From Cyanophora paradoxa CCMP329 (lineage: Eukaryota > Plantae > Glaucophyta): DNA of 64,000 nucleotides. Below the pieces are notes generated by a model. That model ran no database searches, was not told where the DNA came from, and worked only from the letters and a program-made list of their open reading frames with translations. The DNA is taken from assembly GCA_004431415.1 (NCBI GenBank), contig QPMI01000604.1, positions 1-64,000 on the forward strand, read 5' to 3'. Position 1 is the first letter of the stretch. Each line of letters begins with the position of its first letter. This document shows, piece by piece, positions 11,922 through 45,443 of this stretch. Both the position numbers and the translations under genes were made by a program.

Positions 11922-13645
11922 ATGGCTCAGGCTCGTGACCCTCTTTGCCAGATGGTGTTCGCACTTCTTCGCGAGAAGGAGAACCTGGCGCGCTGTCACT
12001 CCCACTACACTGCTGGTGAACGTGACCCGGAGGTGCTTGGGAGCTGCATTCTCTGCAAGTCTGCACGCGATCGCTTCGCTCGTGAAGCTACTCAGTACAC
12101 GATCGATGAGCAAGATACCGTACTGCGGTTGCCCTTGCTCCCCACTATGCGGCCTCAGATCGTTGTACCCCCAGAGTGGCGGGAGAAGATTGTTCACGCT
12201 TACCACGATGACTGGGCTCACCGTGGTGCCCCATTGTTGCTCGGCGCATCGCCTCACGGTTTTGGTGGCCGGGCATGACGACTGCTGTCCATCGCTACGT
12301 GAAGACGTGCCGACACTGTCAGTTTGCCAAGGCTCACAAGAAGCCGAAGTCACAATTCACTGTGATCGAGTCTGAGCATCCTGGCGACTTGCGTCAAGCC
12401 GATCATTTCCCTATGGCGCCCTCTGAGAACGGTCGACTTCACCGTTTCACACTTGTGCACATTGACGTCGACGCTTTTACCAAGTACCCTGAGATTTTGA
12501 TGCTGACGGAGGCTGATGGTCGTGCCTGTGAGTGGGCTGCACAAACTGTGTACGCGAATCACGGCCCTTGCAAGCGGTATCTCACGGATAACGCCAAGGT
12601 CTTCACGCCTACTAGTCTCTGGGGCAAATTCTGGACTCGCCAGGGTACTCGGTTGATTTACGCTCCCACGTCCCACCAGTCCACGAACGGCGGTGCTGAG
12701 CGGCTTGGTGGCATTTACAAGCGCTTGGTGTATGCTCTTTGCGATGAGAACGGGGAGGACAATTCCCATTGGCCTTTCTATCATTATCGCGTACTCTTCG
12801 CTCTCCGGACCACGATTCACGCTGCCACTGGTTTTTCACCCGCCGCTCTGCACTTTGGACGAGAATTGATGTTGCCTGGCGATCTTCGTCTCGACCTCAC
12901 CCTGCGCGAACCTCACGAAGATCCCGTTTCTCTCTACGATTACGCTTTGTCGGTCGCTCGAGCCGCCCGCGACCAAATCTCTGCCGTCCGAGAACACCGC
13001 AAACTTTACAACAAGAAGTTGCTTCGCTATGGCACTGGCCGTGAGCCGCATCGTGTTTTCAAGCCTGGTGACAAAGTGTTGTGCTGGATTATCAGCGCGA
13101 AGACCAGTAACGTCAAGCGCACTGGGCCTCGCAATGGTTGGACTGGCCCTTACACTGTCACTGAGGTTCACTCTCACGGTCTTTTGTACACTGTCCGAGG
13201 CGATGACACTTCACTGGTGTATCGCTCGCGCGAGGTTCTCATGCACGTTGATCTCATGATCGCTTTTCACGAGCGTCCTGCCAATGTTCTCGCTCCCCGC
13301 AAAGCCGGTCGCCCTCGCAAGGCCCCGTGCCTGTGCCGCCCGATCATGAGGTCCCCGTGCCTCCGCCACCTGCCGTTGATCCCGATTCACTTTCCGATGA
13401 TGACACGACGGATGACGAGTCTTGAATCACAGCCCGTACTGCGGTTTACCGGATTCACTTCCGTTGTCGATGACGTGCCCTTCACTGGGATGTGGCTTGC
13501 GAGTTTCGGGAATTCTCTCTTGGCGCTGGGTCAGCGGCTGATCACTGCTGCCTGGTTTGCCCTCAACCAAATGCGCAGCTCTACATCTCTTCTGATCCAG
13601 CCGCGTGGAAGCGTCTGTGAGGACCTGGAGAGCTGTTGCCGATAG
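11922..13645 (+). CDS. Retroviral-type (rve) DDE integrase with H2C2 domain and GPY/F motif (frameshift near 12260)
   Basis: H2C2: IVVPPEWREKIVHAYHDDWAHRG...WWPGMTTAVHRYVKTCRHCQ. DDE: QADHF / YLTDNA / NGGAER. Also ALRTTIHAATGFSPAALHFGRE, WTGPYTVTEV and an AT-hook-like KAGRPRK. Confidence 0.92.
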
Positions 13646-13931
13646 GGTTTCCTAGCCGTTAGTGCTTCGTTTGCACTTCGTTCGCAGTAGTACCGTGACT
13701 TGACCCGCGGCTTCTCGCGATTTCCTGAGTCACTGTACCCCTGTACGAAGATGCGACCCTAGCTACTTTTTCTGACTCTAGCTTGATACTTTCCGGTAGC
13801 CGTGTCCTAGGGTACACAGTAGTCTGTGATTAGCAGCTTTCTCTTGCAACGTGACAGCCTGCTCGCCTGCTGCTGGTACGCTACGGGAAGGTTGCTAAGG
13901 TCTACTGGGACGTATAAAACCTCCTAAAACA

Positions 13932-38868: not shown

Positions 38869-39545
38869 ATCTCGATAGGCCTATATTGGTATAACTAGCC
38901 TAGAAGCGCTAGTTTAGGATACCGCCTGGTTCTAGTCGCCCGCCTGGCGGCCCTGGCCTGCCCAGTACTAGTGCCCGCCTCAGGGTCGCCTAGGCCGTGC
39001 GAGAAGCGGTCAAATTGGGTCAATCCGCCGCCCGCGGCCGGTCATGTTCGCTACACCGTCTTACAGGTCCGGTCGTCAATTCATATTCTCGTGAATGGGC
39101 AACTCGCCGATTCATGCGAGACCGTCGGACTCGAGCTTTTTTCCCCTTGCGACGTTTCGCGTTCGCGCGTGCGTGGCGCGGGCCGGGAGTCGACGTCGGC
39201 CTGCAGCTGGGACTTCAAGCTTCACTCCATCCCGCCTCAGCAAGAAACAGCGCCGCCTAGGCCTGCGTGCCTCGTCGTCCCTCCTCGGGCCAGCAGCAGC
39301 AGCAGGCGTGTGCCTTCGGCACTTGCTCGCCTTAAAAGCTTCAAGGTTCGCAGGCGCGCGGTCGCCCAGTTTTAATTTTGACCGGTCGCGCGCGCGCGCC
39401 GGCCGCGGGCGGCGCGCGCCGCGGCGCCGGCGACGAGCTGCACGGCCCGCGAAGCCTTAGTCCTGTAGCATTCGGCCGAGGCCCGCGCGCCGCAGCTCGG
39501 CCTGCGCGCGAGGTCTGACCGGTGCCGCGGTGCGCGCGCGCGCAG

Positions 39546-42500
39546 ATGAACATCGCTCCGGCGTCGGAGCTCCAGGCCGCCATCGACCAGGCGAAGAAGA
39601 AGCTTACGATCGTCTTTGTCGGGTCCGAGTGTGCGCGCCGAGAAGCGCCGCTGCGGCGCCGGCGCCGCTTCGCGGCCGCGCCGCGCTGACCGGACGGCGG
39701 CCCCGGCCCGACTCCGCCGCATGCATATGCGCAGGCACGCCCTGGTCGAAGACGGGTGTTACGGCAGGGGTGATTCCTAGCCAAATCCGGCGCCGAGCTA
39801 GTGTGAGGTGATCCGGCTACGTAGCCTATTGGATAGGACGCTCGCGTCCAGCGGCCTAGCGGACAGGACGTCGCGTCTGTTGTCTCCGAGACGGGTCCAC
39901 TTCCGCCGCTTCGATTCCGGAGAGGCGCGTTTCCACGGCGACCGCCGTCGACCCCCCCCAACATGTCACGAAAGGCGAGCGTCCTATCCAATAGGCTACG
40001 TAGCCGGATCACCTCACACTAGCTCGGCGCCGGATTTGGCTAGGAATCACCCCTGCCGTAACACGGGTGGCCTTGGAGATGTGTGCTGCGCCATTCTAGA
40101 TCTAGAACCCCGGCTTGCGCGCACGCGCGCGCGCGCGGGCGAGGTCCTCAGACGGAGCACGTGCAGGTCGTGCGGGACCTGCCCATCAGCCTGGCGAAGC
40201 GCGGGCACCGCGTCATGAGCATCCAGCCCCGCTACGACCAGGTGCGACCTCGACATTCCTGGCGCTCGCGCGACGTTTCGGTTCTCGGCGCGCGCTGACC
40301 GCGGCCGCGCGGCCGGCGCGCGCCCGCTCGGATTCGGCGAGCAGTACTTTGACGCCTGGTGCGACCCTGTCAGCGCTGGCCATATTCGTGGCACGTGCTC
40401 GGTTGACTGAACGGCGAATTCGAACGGGCGCGCGCAGGGACACGTCGGTGCGCGCGAGCGTCGAGATGCAAGTCAGCGCCGCCCGCAAGACCGAGGAGGT
40501 CGGCTTCTTCCACAGGTGCGGCGGGTTAACGTTGCCGGGATCAAATTGGGGCCATCTCGGCTTAGACGAGCGACCGTCGGACATTCCTTTAATTTCAAGC
40601 ATCATGATCGTAATCAGTGAATAAAATGTTTCCATAGGTGCAAATTGCAGGGGCCTCCCGGAGTCCTTGATCTAATGGAGGCGTTAACGTTCCCTTTTTA
40701 TTTATTGAATTTTAAAATAAGAAGCGCCCCCGCCTGCCCTGTGCACTTTCGATTCACCTGACGAGCGCCGCGGGCGCCCGCAGCGTCGCGAAGGGCGTCG
40801 ACCGCGTCTTCGTCGACCACCCCTGGTTCCTCGCCAAAGTCTGGGTGCGCTCCTCCTCCGACAAACTTTATCGTCCTTATCGTCCTATCGTACCGAGCGC
40901 TAGCGTTCTACTGATCTTTCAACACGTTTATTTCCGCGCAGGGGATGACGGGGAACAAGCTGTACGGGACCAAGGCCGGCGTGGACTACCCCGACAACGC
41001 CCTCCGCTTCGCCCTCCTCTGCCGCGCCGCCCTCGAGGCCCCCCTCCGCGTGCGCCTCGAATTTATGAACATATATCGAACTACATTTCGATCCATCTTG
41101 ATTTCGAACTAGCGAATATCTTGACTTCGATTTATTACCACTTTATACAGCGAATCTAAATATATACCACCTTGACTTTATAGCATCATAATATATATTT
41201 CGAGCGTCGAATTCGAATTTCACTTGTTCTGCGTCGACGTCAGATTCCGCTGCCGGACCCGTCGGGGGCGCCCTACGGGGAGGAGGTCCTCTTCGTCTGC
41301 AACGACTGGCACGCCGCCCTCCTGCCCCTCTACCTCAAGGTGCCTGGATTTGATTTAACTATAAGAATTTGATTATGTTCATGCTTTGAATTCGTGGACT
41401 CTCTAATGATTTTAATCTGTTCAAACGCCGCCCTCCTGCCCCTCTACCTCAAGGTGTTTATCTCTCTGATGATTTGATTCTTCTTGAACTCTAGCTGTTC
41501 GACAATATTAATATGTATTCAATATGTTCCTCCCCTTCTACCTATAGGCTATTGAATTAAATTACATGCTTTGTATGTGCTTTGTATTGGTGGATGCTTT
41601 AGTGGCTGTTTAATGATTTGATATCGATCCTGATCGAATTCATGCTTTGAGTATTCGATCTGACCGGTGCCGGCCCCGCAGGCACACTACAAGAGCCGCG
41701 GGGTGTACAAGGGCGCGCGGGTCGTCTTCCTCCTCCACAACATCATCTACCAGGCAACCAAACCCAACTGAAACCTGAACCAAACATTTCTACATTAGAA
41801 ATTGCAAATCGGGCTTTCCGAAACAATGCTCCAAACAAAATTTGTCTACTAGGCTAGCTCTTCGCGATCGTTCGCATGACGAGCCCCGCGCTCTCGCGAT
41901 CATCTACATTTACCAGCTAGGCAACCGAGTCTGATAACGAAGCCAACCAAAACCTAAACATTCGTCTAACTCTTCCTTCTTTTATACGACTAACTCTGCG
42001 ATCCGCGCAGGGGCGCTTCCCCGTGGAGTTCTGGCCGGCGCTGGGCCTCCCCGAGGCGGCCCGCCGGGACCTCGCCTTCTCCTCCTGCTTCGCCCCCCCG
42101 CCCCTCGACGGCGTCTCCGACCAGCGTCCGCCCGTTAACCCTTCGTATACGTTAACGTTAACTAAGCTTTAATTTCGATCGCAGCGATCATCTCCCTCGA
42201 GCCGATGGCCATGCTGAACTACCTCCAGGCGGTGCAATCGTTGATTTAATTTAATCTCTTAATCTTATTTGGTGCCATAAATGCAATTATAATTAAATCA
42301 AAACTGTCCCTGTGTGAGCTCAATCGATTATCTATAGCTATATAGCTAGATGAGCTCTAGACGATCGCGAGCTTAATTCTCAACGAGGCGTAGTAAGAAG
42401 ATACATTGCACGCTCAAGCATTCCTAGACGTTTAATTTTGAGTTTTCAACTTCATCCTCTCACTCGCTTGCCCCCACGCGCGCATGCGCAGGGCTTCATC

Positions 42501-45443
42501 CACGCGGACCGCCTCTGCACGGTCTCGCCCCAGTTCGCCGCCGAGGTCGCCTCGGGCCCCCGCGGCGGCGTCGAGCTCGACACGTTCATCCGCGCCAAGG
42601 GCATCACTGTGCGCTGGCGCCGCGAACTTCGCAAACTTAAAGAATTCGCTACGTTTTTGGATTGTTAGTTGCACTGACTGCTAGTTCTTTATATACCGGC
42701 GCCAAGGTATATATAAGAACTAGCAGTCAGTACAGGGCAATCAGAACTAGCAACAGGTATATATATATATATACAGGGCATCACCGTGCGCTGGCGCCAG
42801 CGCCGGCGCCGGCGCTCCCATGGCCAATGCATATGCGAACTTCGCCTAAACCAATTCTAAAGAGAATTCGCTACGTGTCAGCCTGGCAGAGTGTTAATTT
42901 AACTGGATGTTAGTTATATACCTTTTAAAATCTTACATGACTCGGGAGGATTATGTGCGCAGGGGATCATGAACGGGGTGGACGTGGGGACGTGGGACCC
43001 GCAGGCGGACGTCTTCATCGTGACCCGCTACGGCCCCGCGAGCGTCGAGGAGGGCAAGGCCGCCAACAAGGCCGTCCTCCAGGCGCGTCTTTGCTTAATC
43101 GAACCCATTCTTTTCTAGCTTCTCTTATATATGGAAACATAATAAGCACCCCTTACCTTTGGTCTCTTCTGCGCATTCTTCCACTCTTCTTCTTCTACCT
43201 TTTTTCATTTTAATGCCACGCATTCTTCCTTAGCGTTTCTAGCGTCGCTTCTTTATTAAAACTTGACTCACTGTGGACTTCTTTAATTAATTTGCCTTAT
43301 TCATTTCGGTCTTTTAACTCACAGTGGACGTGGGCGCGCAGGGGCAGATGGGCCTGAAGGTGTCCCCCACGACGCCCCTCGTCGCCTTCGTCGGGCGCCT
43401 CGACGACCAGAAGGGTGCCCGAGCTCCCTTGCTCTCGACTTCTTTCGAATTCTAACTTTCGAATTCTTTGCAGGGGCGGACTGCCTGCTGGAGGCCCTGC
43501 CCTACCTCGTCAACACCCTCGGCGCCCAGGTGCGCGATGCGATGCCTTTACTTTAAATTCTCGATGCCCGAAGCTCCTGTAGCTAATTCTCTCAAAGCTC
43601 TCAAAGACCCAATCTTTTGTAATTTCGTCGCCCCTTCTCTCATCTTTCGTGCGCTTCGGGCAGGTCGTGTGCTACGGGACGGGGCGGGAGGACCTCGTCG
43701 CCCAGTTCAAGGCCCTCGAGAAGCTGTACCCGGGGATGGCCAAGGGGAAGACCGCCTTCGTCCCCAAAGAGGAGCACACGGTCCGCCGCATTTAGTTAAA
43801 GTTTCTAGGCATCCAATTGATATTAAGAGATATCGATCTAATTATATATAATGCCTGCACTCTGATGATCGTTTAAATGCGATGTGTCCCCAACGAGGAG
43901 CACACGGTCCGCCGCGTCCATCGCTTCCAGAAGTCCGATTTCATAGATTGAATTAAGTGCCCGCCTTCTGCAAATCGTTTGATTGCGATGCTTTCGATCC
44001 TATTTATGCTGTCTTTAATCCACCCCTTCCTCATACACGAGTATTCCCTTTCTCGAGCTCGACCGCGGCGCTCACCCCCGGCGATCGGCCGCGCAGCTGA
44101 TGGCGGGGGCGGACTACATCGTCGTCCCCTCGCGCTTCGAGCCCTGCGGCCTCGTCCAGCTCCACGCCATGCGGGTCCGCCAAAATAGAAGACGGCTTTA
44201 GAAATATTCTGATCGTGTCTACCGAATAAAATCTCTTTCCAGCTTGGTCATTATTTAATTTTATCTGACCTCTCTACTCTGTTGTTCTAATTATAATTAC
44301 CGATATCGATGCTAATCGTTCACGCGCAGTACGGGACAGTACCGATCGTGTCGTGCACGGGGGGCCTCAAGGACAGCGTCACCCCGCAGTGCGGCTTCAC
44401 CTTCGAGGAGGTGCGCAAATATTAACGCGCATGCTAGCTTTAGTTAATATGACGTCGCGGCGTTTAATGCGGAGGTCGAAGGAAGAAAGAGGCGTGCTAA
44501 TAAAGAGAAATGAAAAAGAATTAGGCCGTGTTGATCGCGCTTTAGGTATTGGATATGCGCTTATCTCTAGCTCATCTAGATCTCTCCGTGATCATGAAAA
44601 TTGAGATTTTATTTAGTTGGTTTATCTGAGTCGGCTTGGGCCTAGGCCTTGATCATGATAACGCGCTGTTTACGCTCTAGACGTGCACGTCACGGCGTGT
44701 GCTAATTATAATATTTATACTCGAGTCCGTGCACGTGTGCTAATTATAATATTTATACTCGAGTCGCTGATCGTGATCGCTTCTGGAAATGGCCCCGCAG
44801 ATCCCGTCGCCGGAGTACCCCGGGATGAAGATCACGCCGGACCTGCTGGCCAAGGGGGCCCGCATCATCGAGGCCGGCTGCAAGGAGGCCCTCGCCGCCT
44901 ACGGCACCAAGGTCCGCGGAGACCAAGCTTAAGGCTAGGGACCGGCGGGCCGGGGCTTCTCCTCTAACGTATTTGAATTTCGGCCTTCAGCTTGAGTTTA
45001 AGCCGAAGCTTAATAAGATGAAGGGGCCGTGGCGGCTCAAGCTTCTCCTCTGACTCTGACTCTCCTTCGTCGGCCCTGCAGGCGCTCACGGAGATGCGGC
45101 GGGCGTGCATGCGGCAGGACTTCCGCTGGGCCACCCGCGTCCTCCTCTACGAGAAGGTCCTTATAAATAGCTTACGTATAATTTACAAGGCACTTATTTA
45201 CTTGTTGTTTGACAGGTCTTCTACGAGACGCTCGGGATCGAGCGCGGGGCGCCGGCCACGCCGAAGGAGGCCCCCGTGGCGCCCGTCCCCTCCGCCGCCC
45301 CCAAGCCCGCCGACCTCGAGGCGGCGCAGGCGCCTCAGGCTCCGGTCCCCGCGGCCGGCCCCGCCACCGCGGCGCCGACGCCGGCGCGCGAGTCGTCGTC
45401 GCGGGCACCGGTACCCCCGGTCCGCAAGGCCGTCAAGGCCTAG
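39546..45443 (+). CDS. GBSS: Granule-bound starch synthase (GT5), ~20 exons, interrupted by a MITE in the KTGGL motif
   Basis: [35 protein letters not shown][insertion][79 protein letters not shown]. Pro/Ala-rich tail ends at TAG 45443. Confidence 0.95.
39757..40063. mobile_element. 307-bp MITE with 89-bp perfect TIRs (TGT...ACA) and 4-bp TSD CGGG; Ginger-like signature
   Basis: 39757-39845 is the exact reverse complement of 39975-40063. CGGG occurs at 39753-39756 and 40064-40067. Removing the element and one TSD restores AAG ACG GGT GGC CTT (KTGGL). Confidence 0.95.

What the first reader, a model, noticed from the sequence alone, without database searches (positions are those of the whole stretch)
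39753..40067. Very recent TGT...ACA MITE disrupts the KTGGL motif of GBSS (natural waxy-like allele)
Perfect 89-bp TIRs and an intact CGGG TSD indicate a young insertion. It adds 311 bp, and read-through hits TGA at 39809-39811. No AG is positioned for precise splicing out, while the other exons I could read look intact. TGT...ACA ends with a 4-bp TSD are the Ginger signature. The big integrase element's end (TGTTTTAGGAGG, reverse complement) partly resembles TGTTACGGCAGG, and both targets read CGNG. This suggests an active Ginger-like family, although the two ends are not identical.
Basis: partly seen in the sequence, partly recalled or inferred. Interest (0 to 1): 0.8.

Follow-up and report, generated by a model that had tools for sequence, protein, structure and literature searches.

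The report
Young MITE breaks a GBSS paralogue
A 307-base hairpin-shaped jumping element really does sit inside the sugar-nucleotide-binding KTGGL motif of a granule-bound starch synthase gene in a Cyanophora-type alga, but the broken gene is a second, diverged copy, so this is a clean example of a known kind of mutation and probably not a starch ("waxy") null.

Summary
A 307-bp element (39757-40063) with perfect 89-bp terminal inverted repeats and a CGGG duplication splits a 35-nt exon. Without the element that exon reads TPWSKTGGLGD.

- **Real insertion:** contigs of two DNA runs cross both junctions without mismatch, and no empty-site contig was seen.
- **Multi-copy family:** depth over the element is several-fold that of the flanks, and RNA-run contigs carry other copies.
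- **Effect on the gene:** read-through stops at TGA 39809-39811. No GT-AG pair can remove the 311 bp, no in-frame cryptic pair restores KTGGL, and skipping the exon shifts the frame.
- **Host gene:** about 22 exons (39546-45443), otherwise intact and colinear with Cyanophora paradoxa GBSS. It is only about 81% identical to three canonical Cyanophora versions, which are 91-98% alike, so it is most likely a paralogue.
- **Second copy:** the same DNA runs hold another GBSS-like copy, so a waxy phenotype is unlikely.
- **Ginger label:** partly supported. The TGTNR ends, TIR length and 4-bp GC-rich duplication fit. The duplication sequence is not canonical, its length depends on how the ends are read, and the neighbouring integrase element shares no end similarity.

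No usable RNA evidence was obtained. The kind of event is known; this is a new instance.

The parts
39757..40063 (.). 307-bp non-autonomous inverted-repeat element (MITE), 62% GC, near-palindromic over its whole length
   Evidence: Junctions on both sides are supported by contigs of DNA runs X1 and X17 (table 8).
39757..39845 (.). Left terminal inverted repeat, 89 nt, starting TGTTA
   Evidence: 100% complementary to 39975-40063.
39975..40063 (.). Right terminal inverted repeat, 89 nt, ending TAACA
   Evidence: In RNA-run contigs that carry other copies, similarity stops at 40063 (table 8, records 19, 20, 25, 28).
39753..39756 (.). Left copy of the target-site duplication, CGGG (4-bp reading)
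   Evidence: The direct repeat can be read as 2, 4 or 6 bp with symmetric ends.
40064..40067 (.). Right copy of the target-site duplication, CGGG
39735..40080 (+). Exon 2 of the GBSS paralogue: 35 nt without the insertion (encodes TPWSKTGGLGD), 346 nt with it
   Evidence: The acceptor is CAG before 39735 and the donor is GTGTGC at 40081.
39809..39811 (+). First in-frame stop (TGA) met by read-through into the element
39546..45443 (+). GBSS-family gene of about 22 exons, from ATG 39546 to stop 45441-45443, colinear with C. paradoxa GBSS A8V967 from residue 1 to the C-terminal tail. The donors I examined are mostly GTGCG or GTCCG, with two best-scoring GC donors (41754, 43083). The acceptors I examined are mostly GCAG.

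Best explanation
A cut-and-paste, non-autonomous DNA transposon (MITE) of a multi-copy and probably still active family inserted recently into the 35-nt second exon of a granule-bound starch synthase paralogue of a Cyanophora-type glaucophyte. It landed between the second and third codons of the nucleotide-sugar-binding K-T-G-G-L motif and duplicated 4 bp (CGGG). The insertion is present in the sequenced DNA (shown). Any transcript that reads through ends after 24 further codons at a TGA, and no canonical splice or exon skip can restore the frame and the motif (shown from sequence). This copy is therefore a null allele (inferred). The transcribed element would also form an 89-bp perfect RNA hairpin, a plausible trigger for RNA silencing (inferred, untested). 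The gene is a diverged second copy and the same DNA carries another GBSS-like gene, so the cell most likely still makes amylose (inferred). By its ends (TGTTA...TAACA), TIR length and GC-rich 4-bp duplication the element looks most like a Ginger1-type MITE. That assignment is provisional.
For: Anatomy. Reads: table 8. In run X1, contigs span 39300-39785 and 40035-41340. In run X17, contigs span 39300-39770 and 40050-41340. All four have 0 mismatches, and table 5 shows no joint that skips the 311 bp. Multi-copy: depth in the bins over the element is 616-1103 (X1) and 319-2120 (X17), against about 160 and 120 in the flanks. A variant internal contig and RNA-run contigs carry other copies that end at 40063 (tables 2 and 8). 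Null effect: the TGA at 39809-39811, and the enumeration of all GT..AG pairs, none of which restores KTGGL. Exon 2 is 35 nt, so skipping it shifts the frame. Gene identity: Glyco_transf_5 and GT1 pieces lie in order across the exons. The best solved structure for every exon tested is 6GNG, C. paradoxa GBSSI. Intactness: full colinearity with A8V967, with in-frame GT-AG or GC-AG joints resolved by the splice search for 19 of the 21 introns and read by eye for the other two. Pairwise dN/dS against a canonical transcript is 0.26. Paralogue status: 81% identity to each of P0032, P0204 and P0206, which are 91-98% alike. X1 and X17 also hold a second contig that shares 42514-42582 exactly, carries the Lys-codon base at 42583 and has single-copy depth (tables 3, 5, 8). 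C. paradoxa is reported as probably haploid (PMC6704402). Ginger1 traits are taken from PMC2836005.
Against: No RNA evidence: the two runs guessed to be RNA show no exon of this gene and no exon of the canonical copy either, so they say nothing about expression, nonsense-mediated decay or unusual processing. All 20 DNA holders may be one strain, so polymorphism (an empty allele) is untested. The species was not verified by me. If the window comes from a Cyanophora species other than C. paradoxa and the second contig is not a functional gene, this could be the main GBSS. No protein 70-90% identical to A8V967 is in the large protein collection, so the paralogue has no independent record. The Ginger assignment fails on the target sequence and lacks a matching autonomous partner.
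Confidence: 0.78

Rival explanations
1. The gene is the only functional GBSS of this organism, being the orthologue in a Cyanophora species distant from the sequenced C. paradoxa strains. In that case the insertion is a true waxy-type null.
For: The gene is equidistant (81%) from all three canonical Cyanophora versions, which also fits a deep orthologue. No separate paralogue protein is on record. I did not verify the species myself.
Against: DNA runs X1 and X17 hold a second GBSS-like contig of single-copy depth. It carries the canonical Lys-codon base at 42583 and a difference at 42513, where the canonical protein has Ile. Earlier follow-ups of this scan identify the genome as C. paradoxa, whose annotated proteome contains an intact 592-aa GBSS, P0204.
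Confidence: 0.1
2. The element is removed from the RNA by a non-canonical route, for example hairpin-guided excision that uses the 7-nt direct repeat brought together by the 89-bp stem, as in euglenid non-conventional introns. Or it behaves as an introner. In either case the gene stays functional.
For: The ends are brought together by a perfect stem and are flanked by a 7-nt direct repeat. The rest of the gene is fully intact. Earlier notes of this scan report introner-like intron families in this genome (unchecked).
Against: None of the eight possible precise excision windows has GT-AG, GC-AG or AT-AC ends, and no in-frame cryptic pair restores the motif. Candidate sites inside the element do not resemble this gene's predominant GTGCG/GTCCG donors and GCAG acceptors. 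No such mechanism is known in glaucophytes, and no transcript was seen.
Confidence: 0.04
3. The paralogue was already silent or dispensable before the insertion, so the MITE is a neutral passenger in a dying gene and not the disabling event.
For: No exon of the gene appears in the two runs guessed to be RNA. dN/dS of 0.26 is higher than is usual for a core enzyme.
Against: About 22 exons, including 12-14-nt and 35-nt micro-exons, are intact, and nearly all splice sites are close to consensus. There is no stop or frameshift other than the MITE. dN/dS is well below 1. The same RNA runs also lack the canonical copy's conserved exon, so they are uninformative.
Confidence: 0.06
4. Assembly or library artefact: a fold-back chimera placed in the exon.
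For: Long perfect palindromes can arise as library artefacts. Contigs break inside the repeat, so no single contig spans the whole element.
Against: Both junctions are found with 0 mismatches in two runs, one of them not flagged as a possible source. A clean 4-bp duplication and precise restoration of the reading frame on removal are signatures of transposition. Other copies of the family exist.
Confidence: 0.02

Closest known systems
Transposon-induced waxy alleles of cereals (for example the maize wx-B2 allele in which the MITE family Tourist was first found, and the transposon-insertion waxy alleles of foxtail millet). This comparison is from my own knowledge and was not checked in a paper here.
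   Same: A small inverted-repeat element inserted in the coding region of a granule-bound starch synthase gene, giving a predicted null allele.
   Different: The host is a unicellular glaucophyte with cytosolic starch. The hit gene is a diverged paralogue with another GBSS copy present. The element belongs to a different, Ginger-like type. No phenotype is known.
Ginger1 DNA transposons and their non-autonomous derivatives (Bao, Kapitonov and Jurka 2010, PMC2836005)
   Same: TGTNR termini (TGTTA here), TIRs within the 40-270 bp range (89 bp), and a 4-bp GC-rich duplication.
   Different: The duplication is CGGG and not CCGG or CCGT/ACGG. The duplication length is ambiguous from one copy. No autonomous partner with matching ends was identified. 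Ginger1 was described from animals.
Cyanophora paradoxa GBSSI (UniProt A8V967; structure 6GNG; PMC6086201)
   Same: The same family and architecture, colinear from Met1 to the Pro/Ala-rich tail, with 70-93% identity per exon and 81% overall.
   Different: About 19% of residues differ, whereas three canonical versions differ from each other by 2-9%. This copy is interrupted in exon 2.
Introner elements (transposon-derived spliceosomal introns of Micromonas, Aureococcus and others). This comparison is from my own knowledge.
   Same: A short TIR-plus-duplication element sitting inside coding sequence of an alga.
   Different: Introners supply or co-opt GT and AG so that they are spliced exactly. 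Here no such pair exists.

Membership tests
MITE (non-autonomous class II transposon) | Terminal inverted repeats | tested here: met
   89-nt perfect TIRs.
MITE (non-autonomous class II transposon) | Target-site duplication, and an empty site that reconstitutes the host sequence | tested here: met
   CGGG stands on both sides, and removal of 311 bp restores TPWSKTGGLGD.
MITE (non-autonomous class II transposon) | Small size without room for a transposase | tested here: met
   The element is 307 bp, mostly stem. There is no tRNA or Rfam match.
MITE (non-autonomous class II transposon) | Multiple copies in the genome | tested here: inconclusive
   Summed contig depth is 2.5- to 18-fold that of the flanks, and other copies appear in RNA-run contigs. 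There is no copy census, no second copy in the window, and no match in metagenome contigs.
Ginger1 superfamily | TGTNR termini | tested here: met
   TGTTA at both ends under the 4-bp reading (PMC2836005).
Ginger1 superfamily | 4-bp target-site duplication | tested here: inconclusive
   The 4-bp reading is symmetric, but 2-bp and 6-bp readings are symmetric too. Other copies stop matching at 40063, which weakly favours 4 bp.
Ginger1 superfamily | Target CCGG (75%) or CCGT/ACGG (24%) | tested here: not met
   The duplication is CGGG, and the site context is ACGGGT.
Ginger1 superfamily | TIRs of about 40-270 bp | tested here: met
   89 bp.
Ginger1 superfamily | An autonomous partner with the same ends that encodes a Gypsy-like integrase (YPYY, H2C2, DDE, GPY/F) | tested here: inconclusive
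   The window's large element encodes an H2C2 plus integrase core. Its end is not similar to the MITE end. The rest of the genome could not be searched.
Granule-bound starch synthase (GT5, GBSS clade) | N-terminal K-T-G-G-L motif | tested here: met
   Present only in the empty-site reading. It is split by the element in the actual sequence.
Granule-bound starch synthase (GT5, GBSS clade) | Glyco_transf_5 catalytic domain followed by a GT1 domain | tested here: met
   Colinear Pfam pieces lie across the exons, mostly below the whole-protein cut-off because each exon was scanned alone. The joined model was not scanned.
Granule-bound starch synthase (GT5, GBSS clade) | Closest relatives are GBSS and not soluble starch synthases | tested here: met
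   The best PDB match is always 6GNG, then rice GBSSI or the CLg1 enzyme. Identity is 81% to C. paradoxa GBSS and 59% to other glaucophyte and red-algal GBSS.
Granule-bound starch synthase (GT5, GBSS clade) | Bound to starch granules and makes amylose | not testable with these tools
   Needs a granule proteome and an amylose assay.
Introner / transposon-derived intron | Element plus duplication provides GT...AG so that it is spliced out exactly | tested here: not met
   None of the possible precise windows has canonical ends, and no in-frame pair restores the motif.

The most novel reading that the evidence does not exclude
The hairpin element is taken out of the pre-mRNA by a structure-guided, non-spliceosomal route, with its ends juxtaposed by the 89-bp stem and flanked by a 7-nt direct repeat, so that the GBSS paralogue stays functional. 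That would be a euglenid-like 'non-conventional intron' arising from a MITE in an archaeplastid. A milder novel reading is that this is the first documented currently active Ginger-type MITE family in Glaucophyta, with a relaxed (CGGG) target.
Probability: 0.04. Interest if true: 0.8.

Novelty: new member of a known kind. Interest (0 to 1): 0.3.

Why it matters
The finding shows that at least one cut-and-paste transposon family has been active very recently in the model glaucophyte lineage, whose published repeat analysis saw 'little or no expansion' of repeats (PMC6704402).

It also provides a natural knockout of one of two GBSS copies. That could be used to ask whether the duplicated enzymes of cytosolic starch synthesis in Cyanophora have divided their roles, a question a 2026 preprint calls open (10.64898/2026.09.25.754361).

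It does not change what is known about how MITEs disrupt genes.

Tried and rejected
- **Splicing rescue.** I enumerated every GT..AG pair in exon 2 plus the element. None restores KTGGL, and precise excision windows lack canonical ends.
- **tRNA-derived or known RNA element.** ARAGORN and Rfam found nothing.
- **The large integrase element as autonomous partner.** I located its integrase, but its end does not align with the MITE end above the level of shuffles.
- **Other copies in public data.** The 26-nt end had no match in metagenome contigs, and the sequence look-up in the scan's notes was blank.
- **Finding this gene's product or fragments in the large protein collection.** An exon query found nothing. 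A search with A8V967 returned no protein of 70-90% identity. Ten exact ORF look-ups all missed. A8V967 has no encoding contig on record.
- **RNA evidence.** The two runs guessed to be RNA carried neither this gene nor the canonical copy's conserved exon, so they could not be used.
- **Joined model.** The joined (spliced) protein model was deliberately not built for any search or fold. All searches were made exon by exon, by reference.

Full report
**1.

The stretch 39757-40063 is a 307-bp element that starts TGT and ends ACA. Its terminal 89 nt are perfectly complementary (39757-39845 against 39975-40063). CGGG stands immediately outside both ends (39753-39756 and 40064-40067).

Element plus one CGGG is 311 bp. 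As single-stranded RNA it folds into one long hairpin of -242 kcal/mol, against -114 +/- 5 for shuffles (z = -24.5). The repeat is therefore not a chance feature.

The direct repeat that flanks the element can be extended to ACGGGTG. As a result, three readings give symmetric ends:
- a 2-bp duplication (GG);
- a 4-bp duplication (CGGG, with TGTTA ends);
- a 6-bp duplication (ACGGGT, with GTTAC ends).

The 4-bp reading is the one that matches known families. It is weakly favoured by other copies seen in read contigs, whose similarity stops exactly at 40063 (table 8).

**2. The insertion is real in the DNA**

Twenty DNA runs of one coded organism hold 96-97% of the sampled words of the gene. I laid two of them on the gene.

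In X1, which may be the source of the assembly, contigs run 39300-39785 and 40035-41340. In X17, which is not flagged as a source, contigs run 39300-39770 and 40050-41340. All four have 0 mismatches, so both flank/element junctions are supported (table 8).

In X1 the contigs stop exactly where a 31-mer graph must fold on the 90-nt palindrome. No contig joins 39756-58 to 40068-70, so no empty site was seen (table 5). Contigs drop rare variants, however, and all the runs may be one strain.

Summed depth over the element is 616-1103 in X1 and 319-2120 in X17, against about 160 and 120 beside it. A variant of the internal part (39892-39961, six differences) has its own contig. Two runs guessed to be RNA contain a 276-nt contig and a 3.3-kb contig that carry ends of other copies. 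The family is therefore multi-copy, and some copies are transcribed.

**3. What is hit**

Deleting the 311 bp gives a 35-nt exon (39735-39756 plus 40068-40080). Together with the last base of exon 1 it reads C-TPWSKTGGLGD. This is the nucleotide-sugar-binding motif of GT5 starch and glycogen synthases.

Scanned exon by exon, Pfam finds Glyco_transf_5 pieces in profile order, followed by a GT1 piece. [quoted passage not shown] Identity is 70-93% per exon, ahead of rice GBSSI and the cyanobacterial CLg1 enzyme (PMC6086201).

With the C. paradoxa protein A8V967 (P0032) as guide, the window gene is colinear from Met1 (39546) to the Pro/Ala-rich tail and the stop at 45441-45443. It has about 22 exons, including micro-exons of 14 and 35 nt. 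Of the 21 exon joints, 19 were resolved by the splice search with a GT (or GC) donor and an AG acceptor, and I read the other two by eye. The donors and acceptors I examined follow a strong consensus of GTGCG or GTCCG donors and GCAG acceptors. There is no stop or frameshift other than the element.

The joined model was not built for any search or fold.

**4. Consequence for this copy**

Read-through adds 24 codons and stops at TGA 39809-39811.

None of the eight possible windows for exact removal begins and ends with GT-AG, GC-AG or AT-AC. Among all GT..AG pairs inside the enlarged exon, the in-frame ones replace or destroy the Lys-Thr of KTGGL. Candidate sites in the element do not look like this gene's donors and acceptors. 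Skipping the 35-nt exon shifts the frame.

The copy is therefore predicted to be null. The hairpin could in addition feed RNA silencing, which is an inference.

**5. It is most likely a paralogue, so 'waxy' is doubtful**

Summed over exon-wise alignments, the window gene is 80.8%, 81.3% and 80.9% identical to three canonical Cyanophora versions. It is about 59% identical to GBSS of Gloeochaete, Cyanoptyche and a red alga. The three canonical versions are:
- A8V967;
- the EukProt C. paradoxa model tig00000135_g7967 (P0204), 98% identical to A8V967;
- a transcript from a 2025 run (P0206, locus L001), 91.5% identical to A8V967.

At the nucleotide level the window gene is 84% identical to L001. 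Pairwise dS is 0.53, dN is 0.14 and dN/dS is 0.26. That is constraint on average, not a long-dead gene.

The gene thus branches outside the canonical Cyanophora group. Decisively for the same-genome question, both DNA runs contain a second path through exon 12:
- A 69-nt contig (42514-42582) has double depth (234 in X17).
- It splits at 42583 into the window's C (Thr codon) and an A (Lys codon, as in all canonical proteins).
- It also differs at 42513, where canonical proteins have Ile.
- It rejoins at 43050-43079, with single-copy depth on each branch (tables 3, 5, 8).

C. paradoxa is reported to be probably haploid (PMC6704402). The second path is therefore better read as another gene than as an allele.

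I did not verify the species myself. Earlier follow-ups of this scan call the genome C. paradoxa. No protein 70-90% identical to A8V967 exists in the large collection. The paralogue therefore has no independent record, perhaps because the insertion defeats gene prediction.

**6. What kind of element**

Ginger1 elements have TGTNR ends, TIRs of 40-270 bp and 4-bp duplications that are CCGG (75%) or CCGT/ACGG (24%) (PMC2836005). This element has TGTTA ends and 89-bp TIRs. Under the preferred reading it has a GC-rich 4-bp duplication, but that duplication is CGGG.

The large element at the left of the window (its end is at 13931) does encode a retroviral-type integrase. An H2C2 zinc domain is split between two frames near 12165-12340, followed by a core that matches foamy-virus and Ty3 integrases at E of about 1e-6. 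Its terminal 120 nt do not align with the MITE end better than shuffled sequence. Only TGTT and a few scattered bases are shared. Its other end is outside the window, so its duplication is unknown.

The proposed family link is therefore unsupported. The Ginger1-like label for the MITE is a reasonable lead and not a demonstrated membership.

**7. What could not be settled**

Expression is open. The two runs guessed to be RNA show no exon of this gene. They also lack the 69 nt shared with the other copy, so they are uninformative. Polymorphism between strains, copy number, the duplication consensus and the autonomous partner all need the whole genome or bench work.

**8. Verdict**

This is a verified, tidy and very young MITE insertion that knocks out one of two GBSS genes of a Cyanophora-type alga. 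It is a new instance of a classic kind of mutation. It is useful as a natural knockout and as evidence of recent transposon activity in glaucophytes, but it is not surprising in kind.

Noticed in passing
window 42600-42953: Intron 12 of the GBSS gene contains a diverged tandem duplication of about 177-225 bp. It repeats the last 9 nt of exon 12 together with its donor site: GGCATCACT+GTGCGCTGGCGCC at 42600-42621 and GGCATCACC+GTGCGCTGGCGCC at 42777-42798, the second preceded by an AG. Either the intron was lengthened by duplication across the exon/intron boundary, or there is a potential 9-nt alternative micro-exon.
   Followed up: partly
window 12165-13642 (+), element end at 13920-13931: The large element's integrase is real: an H2C2 zinc domain at E 2e-10, and a catalytic core matching PFV and Ty3 integrases at E about 1e-6. 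The zinc domain is split between two reading frames near 12230-12275, either by a frameshift or by a short intron. Pfam's rve model did not reach E 0.5.
   Followed up: partly
window 42514-42615 and 43050-43079: DNA runs hold a second GBSS-like copy that is identical to this gene over 69 nt of exon 12. A transcript of a related strain differs at four positions in the same stretch, which may indicate gene conversion between the two copies.
   Followed up: partly
window 40238-40263 and 40355-40380: Two successive introns around the 14-nt micro-exon (YFDAW) start with nearly the same 12 nt (C[AT]GGTGCGACC). This reflects an unusually rigid donor consensus (GTGCG or GTCCG) across this gene.
   Followed up: no
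window 40500-45200: The introns of this gene are markedly AT-richer (window GC 53-55%) than the exons and the surrounding 65-78% GC genome. They contain simple TA and poly-pyrimidine runs.
   Followed up: no
loci L001 and L002 (Logan contigs of SRR33659062 and SRR33659066): These transcripts encode a canonical Cyanophora GBSS that is only 91.5% identical to A8V967, while the EukProt C. paradoxa model is 98% identical. Material labelled Cyanophora in public data therefore spans clearly different strains or species.
   Followed up: partly
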